A stretch of DNA of 6,919 bases from Octopus sinensis (taxonomy: Eukaryota). The notes below the pieces were generated by a model. The model saw only the letters and a program-made list of their open reading frames with translations, made no database searches and had not been told where the DNA came from. The stretch covers positions 1 to 6,919 of the forward strand of contig NW_021829857.1 of the NCBI RefSeq assembly GCF_006345805.1. The letters run 5' to 3'. Shown here in pieces: positions 154 through 6,919 of the stretch. The position numbers and the translations under genes are program-made. Positions within the stretch are counted from its first letter, which is position 1. Each line of letters opens with the position of its first letter.

Positions 154-220
154 ATTTATTATGTAATGAAAGAAAGGACATGACCATCATGAAATACAAC
201 TGTAGTGATCCTATACAACA

Positions 221-605
221 GCGCGCGCGCGCAACGCCCTCTCGCGAATACACAAAGTCCGGAGGAGGGAATTTTGCTGATGTGGCCTTAGCTTATGGAG
301 GCAAGGGAGCGCGAGCCTTAACAAAGAGGCAAGGGAGCGTAAAGCGTTGACCATTAGCGTCCGACAGACAGCGGCAGGCTTTTCATAGAAGCAGACGTTT
401 AATTCGCTCTCTCTCCGGTTGATAGCAGCAGTCTTTTGGCCGAAGACTTTTAACCTGAATTGTTGCAGTCAACATCATCTTCCTCCGGACGCCATTTTTG
501 ACCGTTCTGTTTTTAGCACTGAACATTGTAAATATTACAATCGATTAACTTCAGTCTTGCGCGCCCAGAACCAAGGACATCGGATATACCACTGATTTCT
601 CACCG
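221..605. promoter_or_regulatory. CpG-rich, promoter/5'UTR-like segment
   Basis: Much higher GC and CpG content than the rest of the window. (GC)6 at 221-232, TCTCGCGA at 240-247, YY1-like AAAATGGCG on the - strand at 490-498. No TSS evidence is available from sequence alone. Confidence 0.35.
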
Positions 606-1050: not shown

Positions 1051-1422
1051 TTACACAGTATAATGTGTGATTTAAAGGGATTTGACTGCTATTTCTGCAA
1101 GAGAAAATATCGATACAACTATATTCACAGATATACAAGAAGTGACTCCCAGACCTCAAAATGAATTATAGTTCCTCATCCACGCCAGAAATTTTAAGGG
1201 GACGGGTTAAATCGACATTTACCGAAAGGGGTCTAGTCACCAGATAGGGGTCCTGCATGGCCTCATCAGACACACATAAGAGAGTACGCTGTAATTAATT
1301 GGTAATTGCAACGAGCCTACTTTCATTGCAGATAATCCCCTCAAATATTACACAGTATGATGTGTGATTTCAGGAGATTTGACTGCTATTTCTAGAAGGA
1401 GATGTATTAGTACAACTATATT
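1051..1422 (+). repeat. Pair of diverged 75-bp direct repeats (1051-1125 and 1348-1422) containing the TTTGACTGCTATTTCT motif
   Basis: ttacacagtataatgtgtgattt..atttgactgctatttct..tacaactatatt vs ttacacagtatgatgtgtgattt..atttgactgctatttct..tacaactatatt; equal length. Confidence 0.8.
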
Positions 1423-2150: not shown

Positions 2151-2931
2151 TTTGCTAAACTTTCGCTGTTGTTTCTAGCATATGAAATGTTGCAGTTCAT
2201 GGACCTGTTGTATTGGATTGTGTCGTGTGACAAATAGGTGTACAATTTATAAACTGCAATTAATTTCAGAAGAACAGTAGATCGGAGGGGCATTTAGCTG
2301 CTATTTCAAACAACTCTAGCTATCATGTACACTTCAGCTTTCATCAGCTAATATATAAATATGTATGGAGTTAGAAGAGACGGTATGATGTTGTTTCAAC
2401 GTAGATTTGGCTGCTATATCTAGCAGCTCTGGCATTCGTTTGCATTTTACACATGATTAATTAAATTTTCTCATTAAATTAAACTTTAGTTTGCATTTAA
2501 GTATTACAGTGAAATTAATACAACAACCAAAACTAGTTACAAACACACTCTTAAATATGCTAGAAACAGCAGCTATATAGAAGTATTTCATGTTTTTTTA
2601 CACAGTTTCCTTTCCAAAAACGTGTGTCTACGTAAAGTTTGTGCTTCAGTACAAGAGACTGAGTGAATATGTATAGGGGATGGGGGTCGGTTTTCTGAAA
2701 TAAAATCTGTGAGACTGGTGCCCCTAAATCAGCATAAGCAACAAGGGTATGGATGTATTCGGCAGAGGAAGGAATGGAAGCCACATTTAGGAGAATATCT
2801 TTGCATCGTTTAGGAGTGTGTGAGGGAAGACGACAGGGAACAAATGAATGGATTGATATCTATGTATATACATTTGTACTTATATATTATATATCTCCCT
2901 CCATCTAACTATACAACATGCATTCACATAC

Positions 2932-3093
2932 AGGTGTGGCTGTGTGGTAAGAAGCTTGTTTCCCAACCACACACTCGGGGGTTCAGTCTCACTGTATGAC
3001 AACTTGGACAAGTGTCTTCTACTACAGCATCTGGCCAACCAAAGCCTTGTGGGGAGAATTTGGTTGGCGGAAACTAAAAGAAGCCCATCGTAT
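2932..3093 (+). mobile_element. 5' half (tRNA-like head) of a second octopus-type SINE family, ending at its internal (TA)n microsatellite
   Basis: A-box-like tggctgtgtgg and B-box-like ggttcagtctc (2980-2990). Body ...caaagccttgtg...cggaaactaaaagaagcccatcgtata matches my recollection of an abundant Octopus SINE. Confidence 0.85.
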
Positions 3094-3133
3094 ATTTATA
3101 CCCATACATACATACCATATATATATATATATG

Positions 3134-3164
<31 letters not shown>
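3094..3164. repeat. (TA)n/(TATG)n microsatellite
   Basis: Read directly. Confidence 0.95.
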
Positions 3165-3269
3165 ATTTGGTGATACTAGTTGTGGGTTCTAGCTCGCTCT
3201 GATACTGAGTTGAGTTGGTGCCTTCTAGTATCTCAAAATTCAATATATAATCATTTATGATTATAGTAT

Positions 3270-3362
3270 TCTACGCTGAAGAGAAAAGAAGTTTGGGTAA
3301 GGTAGAATTATCTAATTCTTATGCTTTCCTAAAAACTTGATTTCGAAACGTGCGTCCGTAGA
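3270..3362 (+). ncRNA. Type I hammerhead ribozyme with extended stem II; predicted cleavage after GUC, between 3356 and 3357
   Basis: Stem I UCUACG (3270-3275) / CGUAGA (3357-3362). Core CUGAAGA at 3276-3282. Stem II 3283-3344 is closed by GAAA/UUUC (canonical G-C next to the core), with AAGUUU/AAACUU and AGAAUU-aucu-AAUUCU. GAAA at 3345-3348; stem III AC-GUGC-GU; triplet GUC at 3354-3356. Confidence 0.9.
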
Positions 3363-3856
3363 TAACTTAAAATTGTATGATAGATTGCCGTCAATTCATT
3401 CTCTCTTACCTGTTTGTGTCTGCCTTCCAATTGCTGTGTTTTTACTGAGATCTCCCTTTTAGTAGAAGAAAAAGCTATAACTCTTTGACTGCTATTTCTA
3501 AATTCGGTCTGTGGTAAGGGAATTCGTTGCTAAACCCTTTATTGCTTAGTATTACTTAAATTTTCCTCGAATGAGGCTTTTACATGCCGAAGACTACTTG
3601 GTGTAATTGATAATTATTCCAAATTAATTAATTTCACCCTTCATTATTACGGATAACCATATTTTATCTCAGTAGATGACCACAGCATCTTGTTTTGGCT
3701 ACACGCGGGTGGGAAGGGGCTGGTGACACAATCTTTTCATTCACACTTTGAATTTGGTGATACTAGTTGTGGGTTCTAGCTCGCTCTGATACTGAGTTGA
3801 GTTGGTGCCTTCTAGTATCTCAAAATTCAATATATAATCATTTATGATTATAGTAT

Positions 3857-3949
3857 TCTATGCTGAAGAGAAAAGAAGTTTGGGTAAGGTAGAATTATCT
3901 AATTCTTATGCTGTCCTAAAAACTTGATTTCGAAACGTGAGTCCGTAGA
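3857..3949 (+). ncRNA. Second copy of the type I hammerhead ribozyme; predicted cleavage between 3943 and 3944
   Basis: Same architecture. Stem I UCUAUG/CGUAGA keeps pairing through a U-G wobble. CUGAAGA at 3863-3869, GAAA at 3932-3935, GUC at 3941-3943. The stem III loop is GUGA instead of GUGC. Confidence 0.82.
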
Positions 3950-4194
3950 TAACTTAAAATTGTATGATAGATTGCCGTCAATTCATTCTCTCTTACCTGT
4001 TTGTGTCTGCCTTCCAATTGCTGTGTTTTTACTGAGATCTCCCTTTTAGTAGAAGAAATAGCTATAACTCTTTGACTGCTATTTCTAAATTCGGTCTGTG
4101 GTAAGGCAATTCGTTGCTAAACCCTTTATTGCTTAGTTGTGTGTATAATATATATAATATATATAGATATATATATATATCTATATATAAATAT

Positions 4195-4515
4195 AAATAT
4201 TATTCGAGACAAAACCACTATTTTGCCAAAAAAACAAGGAAAGACTTAATTAATACATAAAATTTTAATAAATAGTCAAAAAACCGCCACTACAATCGTT
4301 TCTTGTCTTGATCGACAATCTTCAGGTGGACTTCCAATAATTCAGTGTCAAATTATGAAGTATTATGTATTAAAATTTTATGTATTAATTAAGTCTTTCC
4401 TTGTTTGTTTGCCAAATAGTGGTTTGTCTCGAATAATATTTTAATATTTTACTATAAAATCGATTTAATCCTAAATCTGATTTTTTCCCTCTAAATTTGG
4501 ATTTATTCCCTAATA
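4195..4515 (-). mobile_element. Fold-back element: ~75-bp inverted arms (4195-4270 / 4368-4441) around an HHR, plus an ~75-bp asymmetric tail
   Basis: Left arm aaatattattcgagacaaaaccacta...cataaaattttaata is the reverse complement of right arm tattaaaattttatg...gtctcgaataatattt (76 vs 74 bp, about 2 indels and 2 substitutions). Flanked by (TA)n on both sides and duplicated at 5287-5612. Confidence 0.8.
4287..4329 (-). ncRNA. Minimal type I hammerhead ribozyme; predicted cleavage after GUA, between 4291 and 4290
   Basis: The - strand reads CCAC-CUGAAGA-UUGUC-gaucaa-GACAA-GAAA-C-gauu-GUA-GUGG. This gives a 4-bp stem I, an intact core, a perfect 5-bp stem II, a 2-bp stem III and an NUH triplet. 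Confidence 0.87.
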
Positions 4516-4574
4516 TTTATTATTTTATAATATATAATATATTATATATATAATATATATATATATATAATATA

Positions 4575-4610
<36 letters not shown>

Positions 4611-4703
4611 AATAATATATATAATATATACTATATATATATATAATGTAATATATATATATATATATGTATTATATATATAATATATATATATATAGAT
4701 ATA

Positions 4704-4777
<74 letters not shown>

Positions 4778-4778
4778 A

Positions 4779-4820
<42 letters not shown>

Positions 4821-4832
4821 TATATATATATA

Positions 4833-4863
<31 letters not shown>

Positions 4864-4984
4864 ATATATTTATATATATATATATTATAATATATTATAT
4901 TATAGATATATATATATATTATATTATAATATATATATATATATATATATATCACACACACACACACACACAACACACACACAC
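4516..4984. repeat. Long degenerate (TA)n tract (~435 bp) followed by (CA)n
   Basis: Read directly; source of the spurious YI-repeat ORFs. Confidence 0.97.
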
Positions 4985-5203
4985 AGGTAGGTGAGCTGGC
5001 AGAATTGTTAGTGCACCGGACAAGTACTTAGCGCTGTTTCACCTGTCACTATATTCTGAGTTCAAATTTCGTCAGGGTTAACTTTGCATTTCAACCTTTC
5101 AGGGTCAATAAATGAAGTACCAGTGAAACATTGGAGTCAATCTTATCAACTCGACACCCCCCCCCCCGCCAAACTTTCAGGCCTCGTGCCTATAGTACAA
5201 CAG
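4985..5203 (+). mobile_element. tRNA-derived SINE, octopus type, apparently full length
   Basis: A box tggcagaattg (4997-5007), B box gagttcaaattt (5058-5069), body agggtcaataaatgaagtaccagt, C-run and caggcctcgtgcc end. Confidence 0.88.
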
Positions 5204-5231
5204 ATATATTATATTTGTGAGTGTATATATC

Positions 5232-5286
<55 letters not shown>

Positions 5287-5290
<4 letters not shown>

Positions 5291-5612
5291 AAATATTATT
5301 CGAGACAAAACCACTATTTTGCAAACAAACAAGGAAAGACTAATTAATACATAAAATTTTAATAATAGTCAAAAAAAAAACCGCCACTACAATCGTTTCT
5401 TGTCTTGATCGACAATCTTCAGGTGACTTCCAATAATTCAGTGTCAAATTATGAAGTATTATGTATTAAAATTTTATGTATTAATTAAGTCTTTCCTTGT
5501 TTGTTTTGCAAATAGTGGTTTGTCTCGAATAATATTTTATAATATTTTACTATAAAATCGATTTAATCCTAAATCTGATTTTTTCCCTCTAAATTTGGAT
5601 TTATTCCCTAAT
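5287..5612 (-). mobile_element. Second copy of the fold-back HHR element (arms 5287-5364 / 5464-5541, plus tail)
   Basis: Near-identical to 4195-4515; the differences are short indels, mostly in homopolymer runs. Confidence 0.8.
5383..5427 (-). ncRNA. Second copy of the minimal type I hammerhead ribozyme; predicted cleavage between 5388 and 5387
   Basis: The - strand reads GUCAC-CUGAAGA-UUGUC-gaucaa-GACAA-GAAA-C-gauu-GUA-GUGGC. Core identical to copy 1; stem I can form 5 bp with one U-G wobble. Confidence 0.85.
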
Positions 5613-5670
5613 ATTATTATTATTATATATATTATATAATATATATATATATATTATATATATATATATG

Positions 5671-5741
<71 letters not shown>

Positions 5742-5742
5742 A

Positions 5743-5795
<53 letters not shown>

Positions 5796-5875
5796 TAATA
5801 TAATATGTATATATAATATATATATATAGTAGATATAATATATATTATATAATATATATATATATTATATATATA

Positions 5876-5929
<54 letters not shown>

Positions 5930-5952
5930 TATGTATATATATATATATACTG

Positions 5953-5983
<31 letters not shown>

Positions 5984-5986
5984 TAT

Positions 5987-6043
<57 letters not shown>

Positions 6044-6069
6044 ACACCACACACACACACACCACACAG
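5613..6069. repeat. Long degenerate (TA)n tract followed by (CA)n (duplicate of 4516-4984)
   Basis: Read directly. Confidence 0.97.
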
Positions 6070-6289
6070 AGGTAGGTGAGCTGGCAGAATTGTTAGTGCA
6101 CCGGACAAAGTACTTAGCGCTGTTTCACCTGTCACTATATTCTGAGTTCAAATTTCGTCAGGGTTAACTTTGCATTTCAACCTTTCAGGGTCAATAAATG
6201 AAGTACCAGTGAAACATTGGAGTCAATCTTATCAACTCGACACCCCCCCCCCCGCCAAACTTTCAGGCCTCGTGCCTATAGTACAACAG
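6070..6289 (+). mobile_element. tRNA-derived SINE, duplicate of 4985-5203
   Basis: Identical by eye to 4985-5203 except one extra A (gacaaagt vs gacaagt). Confidence 0.88.
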
Positions 6290-6364
6290 ATATATATATA
6301 TGTGTGAGTGTATATATCTGTGTGTGTGTATATATATATATAATATATATATTCATGTGTGTAT

Positions 6365-6578
6365 ATCTGAACCCCACCCCAAATAACCATCACTTGACAA
6401 CCTATGTTGGTCTGTTTACAACCCTTTAAGTTAGTTTGGCAAAAGAGACTGATAGAATAAGTCCTCGGCTTACGAAGAATAAATCCTGGGGTCGATTTGT
6501 TTGACTAAAACCCTTTAAGGCAGTGCTCCAGCATGGCTGCAGTCAAATAACTGAAACAAGTAAAAGAAACAAAGAATG
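6365..6578 (+). mobile_element. 3' half of an octopus-type SINE; probable continuation of the head at 2932-3093
   Basis: accatcacttgacaacctatgttggt...ggcaaaagagactgatagaataag...ggggtcgatttgtttgactaa...gtgctccagcatggctgcagtcaaataactgaaacaagtaaaaga. This is the recalled downstream half of the same SINE consensus, and its end is homologous to 828-955. Confidence 0.8.
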
Positions 6579-6789: not shown

Positions 6790-6919
6790 CAGACAGATGT
6801 GAGATTTGGCTGCTATTTCTAGCAGTAACTCTGGCATCCATTAAGCATTGAAACATTCTATATTTAAATGTCTTTTCTTTCTGCCTCCCTCTCAGTATTT
6901 TCTGTTTCCTTCTTCGCGC
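6790..6919 (+). repeat. Dispersed repeat copy, homologous to 2016-2150; runs to the window edge
   Basis: See 2016-2150; also shares gatttggctgcta..tctagcag..ctctggcat with 2404-2433. Confidence 0.7.

What the first reader, a model, noticed from the sequence alone, without database searches (positions are those of the whole stretch)
4195..4441. Ribozyme-capped hairpin: a minimal HHR enclosed by ~75-bp inverted arms (looks like a MITE but probably is not)
Seen: near-perfect 74-76-bp inverted arms around a 97-nt loop. On the - strand the loop holds a textbook 43-nt type I HHR (4287-4329) plus a small hairpin AUAAUU-ugacacug-AAUUAU. A second copy is at 5287-5541. Established: DNA-transposon MITEs do not need ribozymes, whereas PLEs have HHR-bearing pLTRs that can occur in inverted orientation. 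Inference: a repeat annotator would call this a MITE, but it may be a non-autonomous retro-element whose RNA folds into a long rod with a self-cleaving tip. After cleavage the two products would remain paired by the ~75-bp duplex, which could favour re-ligation or self-priming of reverse transcription. I know no named family with this architecture, but cannot check that here.
Basis: partly seen in the sequence, partly recalled or inferred. Interest (0 to 1): 0.85.

Follow-up and report, generated by a model that had tools for sequence, protein, structure and literature searches.

The report
Truncated Penelope-like retroelement palindrome with hammerhead
The ribozyme-bearing hairpin is real, but it is most likely the usual back-to-back scar left when a Penelope-like retrotransposon inserts into AT-rich DNA in an octopus genome, so it is probably ordinary rather than a new kind of element.

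Summary
Window 4195-4441 is a strong inverted repeat, and its minus strand carries a hammerhead-type motif at 4287-4329. That motif is not expected by chance: 1 of 2000 shuffles gave any hit.

Three details need correcting:
- The ribozyme is not "textbook". It has U10.1-A11.1, a 4-bp helix I and a 2-bp helix III. It probably acts only as a dimer.
- It sits in a 53-nt one-sided bulge of a ~95-bp rod, not at the tip.
- The "second copy" is part of a ~1.1-kb tandem duplication bounded by (TA)n tracts. It is not an independent insertion.

The best explanation is a heavily 5'-truncated Penelope-like element (PLE) 3' end, carrying the hammerhead 95 nt from its terminus. It abuts an inverted, shorter copy of the same 3' end, inside a (TA)n microsatellite. 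All four PLE loci I fetched from other animals show this design, with arms of 67-2056 nt. The literature describes it too.

I could not reach an octopus genome beyond an 80-kb sample that held no copy. The link to an octopus PLE family therefore rests on analogy, and a constant-hairpin non-autonomous family is not excluded.

Verdict: new member of a known kind, low to moderate interest.

The parts
4144..4194 (.). TA-rich microsatellite flank on the left (candidate insertion target)
   Evidence: TRF reports period 2 over 4144-4200. The sequence is shown.
4195..4276 (-). Left arm. This is the 3'-terminal ~82 nt of copy A, the hammerhead-bearing copy whose RNA sense is the minus strand. The terminus is at 4195.
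   Evidence: Inverted repeats and half-alignments. The hammerhead cut lies 95 nt from the terminus, against 49-155 nt in four reference PLE loci.
4277..4286 (-). U-rich linker CGGUUUUUUG between the hammerhead and the arm. It is part of the 53-nt one-sided block.
   Evidence: Alignment of the two halves.
4287..4329 (-). 43-nt hammerhead-type motif, type I. Helix I is CCAC/GUGG, the core is CUGAAGA...GAAA, helix II is 5 bp with loop GAUCAA, and helix III is A-U + C-G with loop GAUU. The cut is predicted after A4291.
   Evidence: Descriptor search with shuffles. Energies and the predicted double-hammerhead dimer. No Rfam hit, but the controls are also missed.
4331..4362 (-). Inner stem-loop ACUUCAUAAUUU-GACACU-GAAUUAU(UG)GAAGU. 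It is either a native hairpin upstream of the ribozyme or the innermost part of the palindrome. The symmetry centre is near 4346/4347.
   Evidence: Minimum-energy folds; half-alignment.
4360..4441 (+). Right arm. This is copy B, an inverted and more 5'-truncated copy of the same 3' end. Its terminus is at 4441.
   Evidence: The same arrangement occurs in L003, L007, L008 and L009.
4442..4515 (+). One-sided 74-nt non-repetitive extension between the right arm and the long (TA)n. It is a candidate PLE 'tail' and/or original flank. It contains a 21-nt x2 tandem at 4471-4511.
   Evidence: The sequence, TRF and its duplication together with the element. Reference loci have one-sided tails of 29-35 nt. 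Assignment here is inconclusive.
4526..4952 (.). Long (TA)n microsatellite on the right side
   Evidence: TRF.
5291..5537 (-). Duplicate of the whole palindrome, inside the second ~1.1-kb tandem unit. The hammerhead is at 5384-5426, with helix I weakened to UCAC/GUGG by a 1-nt deletion.
4195..6355 (.). Two tandem ~1.1-kb units (about 4195-5290 and 5291-6355). Each holds the palindrome, extension, (TA)n, (CA)n, a SINE and (TG/TA)n. The junctions lie in TA tracts.
   Evidence: Direct-repeat spacings of 1085-1098 and pairwise alignments.

Best explanation
This is a dead-on-arrival insertion made by Penelope-like-element (PLE) retrotransposition machinery into AT-rich, (TA)n DNA of an octopod genome.

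**The two copies**
- Copy A lies on the minus strand, about 4362->4195. It is only the last ~150-170 nt of the template RNA. It keeps a small type I hammerhead motif 95 nt upstream of the 3' terminus.
- Copy B lies on the plus strand, about 4360->4441. It is an inverted, even shorter copy of the same 3' end, abutting copy A head to head. It may carry a one-sided extension, 4442-4515.

**Origin of the hairpin**
- The long 'hairpin' is the DNA-level palindrome that PLE integration routinely leaves behind. It is not an RNA rod shaped by selection.
- Inferred cause: either both nicked target strands prime reverse transcription at the same internal start site, or the cDNA snaps back on itself.

**The hammerhead**
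- It is the family's normal ribozyme.
- With a 2-bp helix III whose sequence ACGAUUGU is self-complementary, it would cleave, if at all, as a dimer and probably with protein help.

**Later event**
- Unequal exchange between flanking TA tracts duplicated the whole ~1.1-kb segment. That is why two copies are seen.

**Shown here:** the palindrome, the motif, its non-chance status, the duplication, and the same architecture in four real PLE loci.

**Inferred:** that an octopus PLE or a PLE-dependent RNA was the template, the priming mechanism, and any cleavage.
For: **In the window**
- The arms run exactly to both outer ends. Both ends carry the same terminal sequence, AAATATTATTCGAGAC.... This is expected if both ends are reverse-transcription start sites.
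- The motif matches a hammerhead descriptor only at this site: 1 of 2000 shuffles, and 0 hits in 160 kb (both strands) of octopus DNA.
- The same descriptor picks out the known ribozyme position next to RT ORFs in L003, L007 and L009.
- RNAcofold of two 43-mers gives the double-hammerhead with an 8-bp intermolecular helix III. The energy is -21.4 kcal/mol against 2 x -6.5.
- The flanks are (TA)n on both sides.
- The SINE translation hits only Octopus bimaculoides proteins, so the host is an octopod. Octopus genomes carry PLE families (PMC13282606).

**In four reference PLE loci**
- All four PLE loci I fetched have an inverted, 5'-truncated copy abutting the main copy. I chose them without knowing their structure.
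- Their arms are 98-100% complementary and reach the element's terminus. Lengths are 67 nt (L003), 2056 nt (L007), 1031 nt (L008) and ~255 nt (L009).
- Their hammerheads lie 49, 53, 56 and 155 nt from the terminus. Here the distance is 95 nt.
- Each has a one-sided 29-35-nt tail.

**In the literature**
- PLE insertions are highly 5'-truncated and often carry an adjacent inverted 5'-truncated copy. They have a 30-40-bp tail at one end, prefer microsatellites, and place the HHR near the 3' end (PMC8557442).
- The Poseidon protein nicks and extends both strands of AT-rich DNA. It starts reverse transcription internally, 85-92 nt downstream of the HHR cut (PMC11167929).
- Most genomic PLE hammerheads are solitary and lie in truncated copies. 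They have a short helix I and a palindromic helix III, and act as dimers (PMC4209133).
Against: - No sequence link to any RT/GIY-YIG-coding element was obtained. tblastn with 40 PLE proteins finds nothing in the window or in 80 kb of O. bimaculoides, and that sample holds no other copy of the element.
- The hammerhead departs from the PLE min-HHR consensus. It has U10.1-A11.1 instead of G-C, no extra base after A9, and a loop in helix III. The three descriptor-matched reference hammerheads (L003, L007, L009) all have the extra base, G10.1-C11.1 and GAAAC-GUY.
- The extension is 74 nt, twice the usual tail.
- No TSD can be resolved.
- The inner 12-bp stem makes the asymmetry exactly the ribozyme block. 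The simple model does not predict this. It needs either a native hairpin or a later one-sided deletion.
Confidence: 0.58

Rival explanations
1. It proposes a non-autonomous retroelement family whose unit is the whole ~250-320-nt hairpin. The RNA would fold into a long rod with a hammerhead. The rod would hold the cleavage products together and help re-ligation, self-priming or recognition by a PLE reverse transcriptase.
For: - The unit is compact and AT-rich (27% GC).
- The asymmetry between the halves is exactly the ribozyme block, flanked by paired stems on both sides.
- In vitro, about 150 nt around and downstream of the HHR suffices as a PLE template (PMC11167929). Short HHR-bearing RNAs could therefore be mobilised in trans.
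Against: - There is only one independent locus. The second copy comes from a segmental duplication.
- No copy was found in 80 kb of O. bimaculoides.
- About 96% arm identity is what a DNA-level inverted duplication gives. The same palindromes arise as by-products in 4 of 4 ordinary PLE loci.
- The HHR was dispensable for insertion in vitro.
Confidence: 0.15
2. A solitary unit or fragment of a metazoan non-LTR retrozyme. These are PLE-derived, HHR-bearing tandem repeats expressed as small circular RNAs.
For: - Retrozyme units are 170-400 nt, of low GC and highly self-paired. They carry type I hammerheads with a short palindromic helix III that work as dimers (PMC7229834; PMC4209133). The size, GC and helix III here fit.
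- Retrozymes are reported as derivatives of PLE pLTRs, and monomeric copies exist (bioRxiv 10.64898/2026.07.22.740005).
Against: - There is no head-to-tail tandem of the unit itself. The two hammerheads are 1097 nt apart, separated by microsatellites and a SINE.
- The near-perfect arms look like a recent inverted duplication, not an evolved imperfect rod.
- Helix I is only 4 bp, with no loop-loop contacts.
Confidence: 0.1
3. A foldback-type MITE or other DNA-transposon derivative whose internal region happens to contain, or has captured, a hammerhead-like string.
For: - It has long terminal inverted repeats, a small size, high AT content and TA-rich flanks.
- MITE families are annotated in Octopus vulgaris (PMC13282606).
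Against: - No TSD is detectable for any tail length from 0 to 100 nt.
- The termini do not resemble Tc1/mariner, hAT or piggyBac ends (my own knowledge).
- A chance hammerhead in this 250-nt stretch is very unlikely.
- The ribozyme-to-terminus geometry fits PLEs.
Confidence: 0.07
4. A local inverted duplication or assembly artefact, with a hammerhead-like sequence that arose by chance and has no retroelement origin.
For: - The differences between the tandem units, and between the arms, are mostly homopolymer-length changes. This is typical of noisy long-read assemblies.
- Genome-wide, my descriptor's false-positive rate (5e-4 per 6.9 kb) would still give on the order of 100-200 chance hits in a genome of about 2.7 Gb (genome size from my own knowledge).
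Against: - Chance would have to place the motif exactly in the unique part of a palindrome, in (TA)n, at a PLE-like distance from the end.
- The helix III segment is self-complementary, as in real dimer-acting hammerheads.
Confidence: 0.04

Closest known systems
Penelope-like element (PLE) insertions with an inverted 5'-truncated copy (pseudo-LTR / inverted-repeat structures; Penelope/Poseidon, Neptune and related clades)
   Same: - A hammerhead in sense orientation tens of nt to ~150 nt from the 3' terminus.
- An inverted partial copy of the 3' end abutting the main copy, so the arms reach both outer ends.
- An AT-rich or microsatellite target and a one-sided extension.
- Seen directly in L003, L007, L008 and L009 and described in PMC8557442 and PMC11167929.
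   Different: - There is no RT/GIY-YIG ORF here, and the main copy is cut down to ~150-170 nt.
- The inverted copy stops 16 nt short of the ribozyme cut (14 nt short on the 82-nt alignment arm), so only one hammerhead is present.
- The hammerhead has U10.1-A11.1 and a looped helix III.
- The extension is 74 nt.
- Homology to an octopus PLE is untested.
Minimal PLE hammerheads (min-HHRs; Cervera & de la Pena 2014, PMC4209133)
   Same: - Type I topology and the CUGANGA/GAAA core.
- A short helix I (4-5 bp).
- A tiny, self-complementary helix III, implying dimeric action.
- Mostly solitary genomic copies in truncated elements.
   Different: [quoted passage not shown]
- It lacks the G10.1-C11.1 pair.
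- Helix II is 5 bp rather than 6-8.
Metazoan non-LTR retrozymes (Cervera & de la Pena 2020, PMC7229834)
   Same: It is small (170-400 nt), low in GC and highly self-paired. It carries a type I hammerhead with a short palindromic helix III, and it is linked to PLEs.
   Different: - Retrozymes are head-to-tail tandem arrays whose units are released by two cleavages and circularised.
- Here the unit is not tandem. Its self-pairing is a near-perfect DNA palindrome.
MITEs / foldback DNA transposons
   Same: Long terminal inverted repeats, short length and AT richness. A repeat annotator would likely call it a MITE.
   Different: No TSD, no recognisable superfamily termini, and a ribozyme motif with PLE-like placement.

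Membership tests
Hammerhead ribozyme, type I | Conserved core CUGANGA ... GAAA ... U-H, with helices I, II and III in type I order | tested here: met
   Minus strand 4329-4287. Descriptor hit. Helices are 4, 5 and 2 bp.
Hammerhead ribozyme, type I | G10.1-C11.1 pair closing helix II | tested here: not met
   The sequence shows U10.1-A11.1. PMC4209133 calls G10.1-C11.1 highly conserved.
Hammerhead ribozyme, type I | Match to a curated Rfam hammerhead covariance model | tested here: inconclusive
   No hit at E<=1 on the window or E<=10 on 4260-4360. Bona fide PLE hammerheads in L007 and L009 are also missed.
Hammerhead ribozyme, type I | Conservation and covariation of the helices across independent copies | tested here: inconclusive
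   Only two near-identical copies exist, both from one segmental duplication. No other copy was reachable.
Hammerhead ribozyme, type I | Site-specific self-cleavage | not testable with these tools
   This needs in vitro transcription of monomer and dimer constructs.
Penelope-like element insertion | ORF with reverse transcriptase and GIY-YIG endonuclease | tested here: not met
   There are no long ORFs. tblastn with 40 PLE proteins finds nothing in the window. The locus can only be a truncated or non-autonomous derivative.
Penelope-like element insertion | Hammerhead in sense orientation near the 3' terminus | tested here: met
   95 nt from the cut to the terminus. Reference loci give 49, 53, 56 and 155 nt.
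Penelope-like element insertion | Inverted 5'-truncated copy abutting the 5' end, with arms reaching the element terminus | tested here: met
   The same is seen in 4 of 4 reference loci and described in PMC8557442.
Penelope-like element insertion | AT-rich or microsatellite target | tested here: met
   (TA)n on both sides.
Penelope-like element insertion | One-sided 30-40-bp tail and a target-site duplication | tested here: inconclusive
   A 74-nt one-sided extension is present. No TSD is resolvable in the TA-rich flanks. Reference loci show 10-13-bp TSDs and 29-35-nt tails.
Penelope-like element insertion | Sequence homology of the fragment to the 3' end or pLTR of a coding PLE in the same genome | not testable with these tools
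   No searchable octopus genome was available. The 80-kb sample was negative.
Non-LTR retrozyme | Unit of 170-400 nt, low GC, highly self-paired, with a type I hammerhead | tested here: met
   247-321 nt, 26-27% GC, fold.
Non-LTR retrozyme | Head-to-tail tandem repetition of the unit itself | tested here: not met
   The hammerheads are 1097 nt apart, separated by microsatellites and a SINE.
MITE | Terminal inverted repeats | tested here: met
MITE | Superfamily-specific target-site duplication | tested here: not met
   None was found for any boundary or tail length. The TA-rich flanks limit the power of this test.
MITE | Many dispersed copies sharing termini with a transposase-coding element | not testable with these tools
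   No octopus genome search was available.

The most novel reading that the evidence does not exclude
The hairpin is the constant unit of an undescribed cephalopod family of PLE-dependent non-autonomous retroelements, a 'hairpin retrozyme'. In it, a dimer-acting hammerhead sits in a lateral bulge of a ~95-bp rod. The rod, not tandem repetition, would keep the cleavage products together for re-ligation or would prime reverse transcription.
Probability: 0.12. Interest if true: 0.6.

Novelty: new member of a known kind. Interest (0 to 1): 0.27.

Why it matters
If the main reading is right, there is little new biology.

- **Cephalopod record.** It documents a hammerhead-bearing PLE remnant in an octopod genome. 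In the paper library I searched, only Craig et al. 2021 contains both 'hammerhead ribozyme' and 'octopus', with one mention of octopus.
- **Annotation.** The shortest head-to-head PLE insertions mimic MITEs, so repeat annotators could misfile them.
- **Host side effects.** If transcribed, a ~80-95-bp near-perfect duplex would be a substrate for Dicer or ADAR. Cephalopods edit RNA heavily (my own knowledge), so this could matter.
- **If the constant-hairpin reading is right.** It would add a new structural solution to how ribozyme-bearing retroelements keep their cleaved ends together.

Tried and rejected
**Routes to family copies that failed**
- A protein search with the 64-aa stop-free frame across the element found no candidates.
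- Exact-product look-ups of four window ORFs found none on record.
- The pattern CTGAAGATTGTCN{4,8}GACAAGAAAC, scanned in the metagenome and viral collections, gave one match. It lies inside a phage coding region and is a chance hit.
- blastn of the element against the rest of the window found no partial copies.

**Workaround that partly worked**
- A six-frame translation of an Octopus SINE consensus was used as a protein query. I recalled the consensus from memory and checked it at 83-85% identity to window 2931-3095 and 6388-6507.
- The query returned only Octopus bimaculoides proteins.
- This gave 80 kb of that genome. It contained no copy, no hammerhead and no PLE. The sample is far too small to estimate copy number.

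**Other dead ends**
I replaced them with tblastn using PLE proteins.
- The supplements of the two most relevant papers hold no sequences.

**Readings rejected**
- The two copies as independent insertions.
- The Rfam miRNA and snoRNA hits, which are microsatellite artefacts.
- Rfam's silence as evidence against the ribozyme.
- A coding overlap of the hammerhead with an ORF start, as in Anolis Poseidon. All frames are closed.

Full report
**1. What is in the sequence**

Window 4195-4441 is a strong inverted repeat.
- The arms are 4195-4276 and 4360-4441. They align over about 80 nt with two single-base indels and two or three mismatches.
- As minus-strand RNA the segment folds at -103.9 kcal/mol. 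Dinucleotide shuffles average -38.3 +/- 4.3 (z = -15.2), and none of 200 folds as well.
- The minus strand from 4329 to 4287 reads CCAC CUGAAGA UUGUC GAUCAA GACAA GAAA C GAUU G U A | GUGG.
- That is the type I hammerhead order: helix I strand, CUGANGA, helix II hairpin, GAAA, helix III hairpin, U-H, helix I strand. The scissile bond falls between 4291 and 4290.

I wrote a relaxed descriptor for this motif.
- In the window it matches only this site and its duplicate at 5384-5426.
- It matches 1 of 2000 dinucleotide shuffles of the window.
- It matches nothing in 80 kb of Octopus bimaculoides DNA, even with helix I relaxed to 2 bp.
- It does recover the hammerheads that sit beside reverse-transcriptase ORFs in three reference loci.

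So the motif is real and is not a chance match at the scale of this window.

**2.

*The ribozyme is not textbook.*
- The pair closing helix II is U10.1-A11.1. Cervera and de la Pena call G10.1-C11.1 highly conserved (PMC4209133).
- Helix I is 4 bp and helix III is only A-U plus C-G with a 4-nt loop.
- Within the 87-nt unique region, the hammerhead fold (-12.1 kcal/mol) loses to an alternative fold (-14.5).
- Two copies of the 43-mer are predicted to form the classical double hammerhead, with an 8-bp intermolecular helix III (ACGAUUGU on ACGAUUGU, two G-U pairs). The energy is -21.4 kcal/mol against 2 x -6.5 for monomers.
- This matches the dimer-acting, weakly active or protein-assisted ribozymes described for animal PLEs and retrozymes.

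*Rfam is silent but uninformative.*
- Rfam reports no hammerhead here, even at E<=10 on a 101-nt slice.
- It also misses the bona fide PLE hammerheads of L007 and L009.

*The ribozyme is a lateral bulge, not a cap.*
- Aligning the left half against the reverse complement of the right half shows one asymmetry, a 53-nt block at 4277-4329. That block is the hammerhead plus CGGUUUUUUG.
- It lies between the 82-nt arms and an inner 11-13-bp stem with a 6-nt tip centred near 4346.

*The second copy is not an independent insertion.*
- It belongs to a tandem duplication of a ~1.1-kb unit, about 4195-5290 and 5291-6355.
- The unit also carries the 74-nt stretch 4442-4515, about 430 bp of (TA)n, (CA)n and a SINE.
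- Both junctions lie in TA tracts, and the units differ mostly by homopolymer indels.
- Unequal exchange between TA tracts, or an assembly artefact, explains the duplication.

**3. Host**

- The window holds SINE pieces that are 83-85% identical to an Octopus SINE consensus I recalled from memory.
- A six-frame translation of that consensus, used as a protein query, returned only Octopus bimaculoides proteins.
- The window therefore comes from an octopod genome.
- Octopus genomes carry Penelope-like families (PMC13282606).

**4. What the structure most likely is**

*What the literature describes for PLE insertions*
- They are heavily 5'-truncated and often carry an inverted 5'-truncated copy directly adjacent at the 5' end.
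- They have a 30-40-bp tail at one end, prefer microsatellites, and place the hammerhead near the 3' end (PMC8557442).
- The purified Anolis Poseidon protein nicks and extends both strands of AT-rich DNA.
- It begins reverse transcription at internal sites 85-92 nt downstream of the hammerhead cut. The tail is the stretch between its two start sites.
- Its ribozyme needs protein to cleave and is dispensable for insertion in vitro (PMC11167929).

*How I tested this against real loci*
It returned 5530 RT/GIY-YIG-type proteins.
- I fetched the DNA around four of them without knowing their structure.

| Locus | Source | Arm length | Complementarity | Ribozyme in arms | Cut to terminus |
|---|---|---|---|---|---|
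| L003 | Lytechinus | 67 nt | 100% | 3' part only | 56 nt |
| L007 | ENA assembly | 2056 nt, 29-nt centre | 100% | both arms | 49 nt |
| L008 | Tenebrio | 1031 nt | 100% | both arms (variant core) | 53 nt |
| L009 | Patiria | ~255 nt | 98-100% | both arms | 155 nt |

- All four show an inverted, 5'-truncated copy abutting the main copy, with arms running to the element's terminus.
- Each locus has a 10-13-bp target-site duplication and a one-sided 29-35-nt tail.

*How the octopus structure compares*
- The inverted copy is about 80 nt, and the main copy is itself truncated to about 150-170 nt.
- The ribozyme lies 95 nt from the terminus, so it falls just outside the arms.
- (TA)n lies on both sides, and there is a one-sided extension.

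I therefore read the hairpin as the palindromic scar of one PLE-type insertion event, not as an RNA rod shaped by selection.

**5. What remains unproven**

- I could not search an octopus genome.
- Four routes failed: a protein search with a translated frame, exact-product look-ups, collection scans that gave only a chance phage hit, and a search of the rest of the window.
- The 80 kb of O. bimaculoides reached through SINE-containing gene models held no copy, no hammerhead and no PLE. That sample is too small to bound copy number.
- Homology to a coding octopus PLE is therefore untested.
- The hammerhead differs from the min-HHR style of the three descriptor-matched reference hammerheads (L003, L007, L009), which have an extra base after A9, G10.1-C11.1 and GAAAC-GUY. 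Its looped, self-complementary helix III is closer to the canonical animal type I motif found in retrozymes and some PLEs.
- The extension is 74 nt and contains a 21-nt x2 repeat.
- No target-site duplication can be resolved in the TA-rich flanks.
- The inner stem means the asymmetry is exactly the ribozyme block. It could be a native hairpin upstream of the ribozyme. It could equally be a once-symmetric palindrome like L007 that lost the ribozyme block from one arm. Long perfect palindromes are known to suffer such asymmetric deletions (my own knowledge).

**6. Rivals**

About 150 nt around the ribozyme suffices as a template in vitro. No evidence of a family exists yet.
- *Solitary retrozyme unit.* It fits in size, GC and helix III, but fails the defining head-to-tail tandem test.
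- *MITE.* It fails on the TSD and cannot explain the ribozyme or its PLE-like placement.
- *Chance motif in a local or artefactual inverted duplication.* It is unlikely given and the geometry.

**7. Verdict**

- The most likely identity is a truncated, head-to-head PLE-type insertion carrying a dimer-type hammerhead. That makes it a new member of a known kind, of low to moderate interest.
- One BLAST of 4195-4515 against an Octopus assembly would decide between a variable-truncation PLE remnant and a constant-hairpin family.

Noticed in passing
window 1079-1101, 1376-1398, 2035-2057, 2404-2426, 6803-6825 (weaker: 2158, 2290, 3481, 4068): The motif GATTTGGCTGCTATTTCTAGCAG recurs at least five times, always on the plus strand. 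It contains the small hairpin GCTGCTA-TTTC-TAGCAGC. Only two copies occur in 80 kb of O. bimaculoides (L006 9342 and 26821). It looks like a local cluster of an unnamed dispersed repeat.
   Followed up: partly
window 4195-5290 and 5291-6355: A ~1.1-kb tandem duplication has both junctions inside TA microsatellites. The units differ mostly by homopolymer-length changes. It is either unequal crossing-over or an assembly artefact. It puts two hammerheads 1097 nt apart on one strand, which is the arrangement a dimer-acting ribozyme would need.
   Followed up: yes
window 3165-3551 and 3752-4138: A second local duplication: a ~390-bp segment repeated 587 bp apart. The first 300 nt are 99% identical (family D6); the full extent to 3551/4138 is my reading of the sequence. 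The first copy starts right after a (TA)n tract, and the second ends at the TA tract that flanks the palindrome.
   Followed up: no
window 4471-4511 (and 5569-5609): A 21-nt unit (consensus CTAAATCTGGATTTATTCCCT) is repeated twice inside the 74-nt one-sided extension.
   Followed up: no
window 2931-3095 and 6388-6507; proteins P0121-P0128: A six-frame translation of the Octopus SINE consensus matches only annotated O. bimaculoides proteins. These include a Myb-domain protein LOC106868758, LOC106867260, actin-related protein 10 isoform X1 and Xaa-Pro dipeptidase. SINE pieces are therefore exonised or mis-annotated as coding in that gene set.
   Followed up: partly
proteins P0017 and P0114: Typical animal PLE reverse transcriptases are labelled 'MAG... 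Alphaproteobacteria bacterium' in NCBI. This is probably eukaryotic contamination in metagenome-assembled genomes.
   Followed up: no
L008 6933-6971: The Tenebrio PLE carries a hammerhead-like motif whose core reads CCGAAGA instead of CUGANGA (U4 to C). It is either a variant or a decayed ribozyme. An assembly gap of Ns starts at L008 4786.
   Followed up: no
L003, L007, L008, L009 insertion ends: All four reference PLE insertions show a 10-13-bp target-site duplication plus a one-sided 29-35-nt tail. The tail lies on the inverted-copy side in L003 and L008 and on the right end in L007 and L009.
   Followed up: yes
window 3093-3186, 5221-5292, 6292-6363: The Rfam sub-threshold hits to mir-297, mir-1277, mir-3149 and others all fall on TA/TG microsatellites and are composition artefacts.
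   Followed up: yes
window 200-420: A GC-richer patch with a (GC)5 run and short ORFs on both strands stands out from the AT-rich surroundings. I did not examine it.
   Followed up: no
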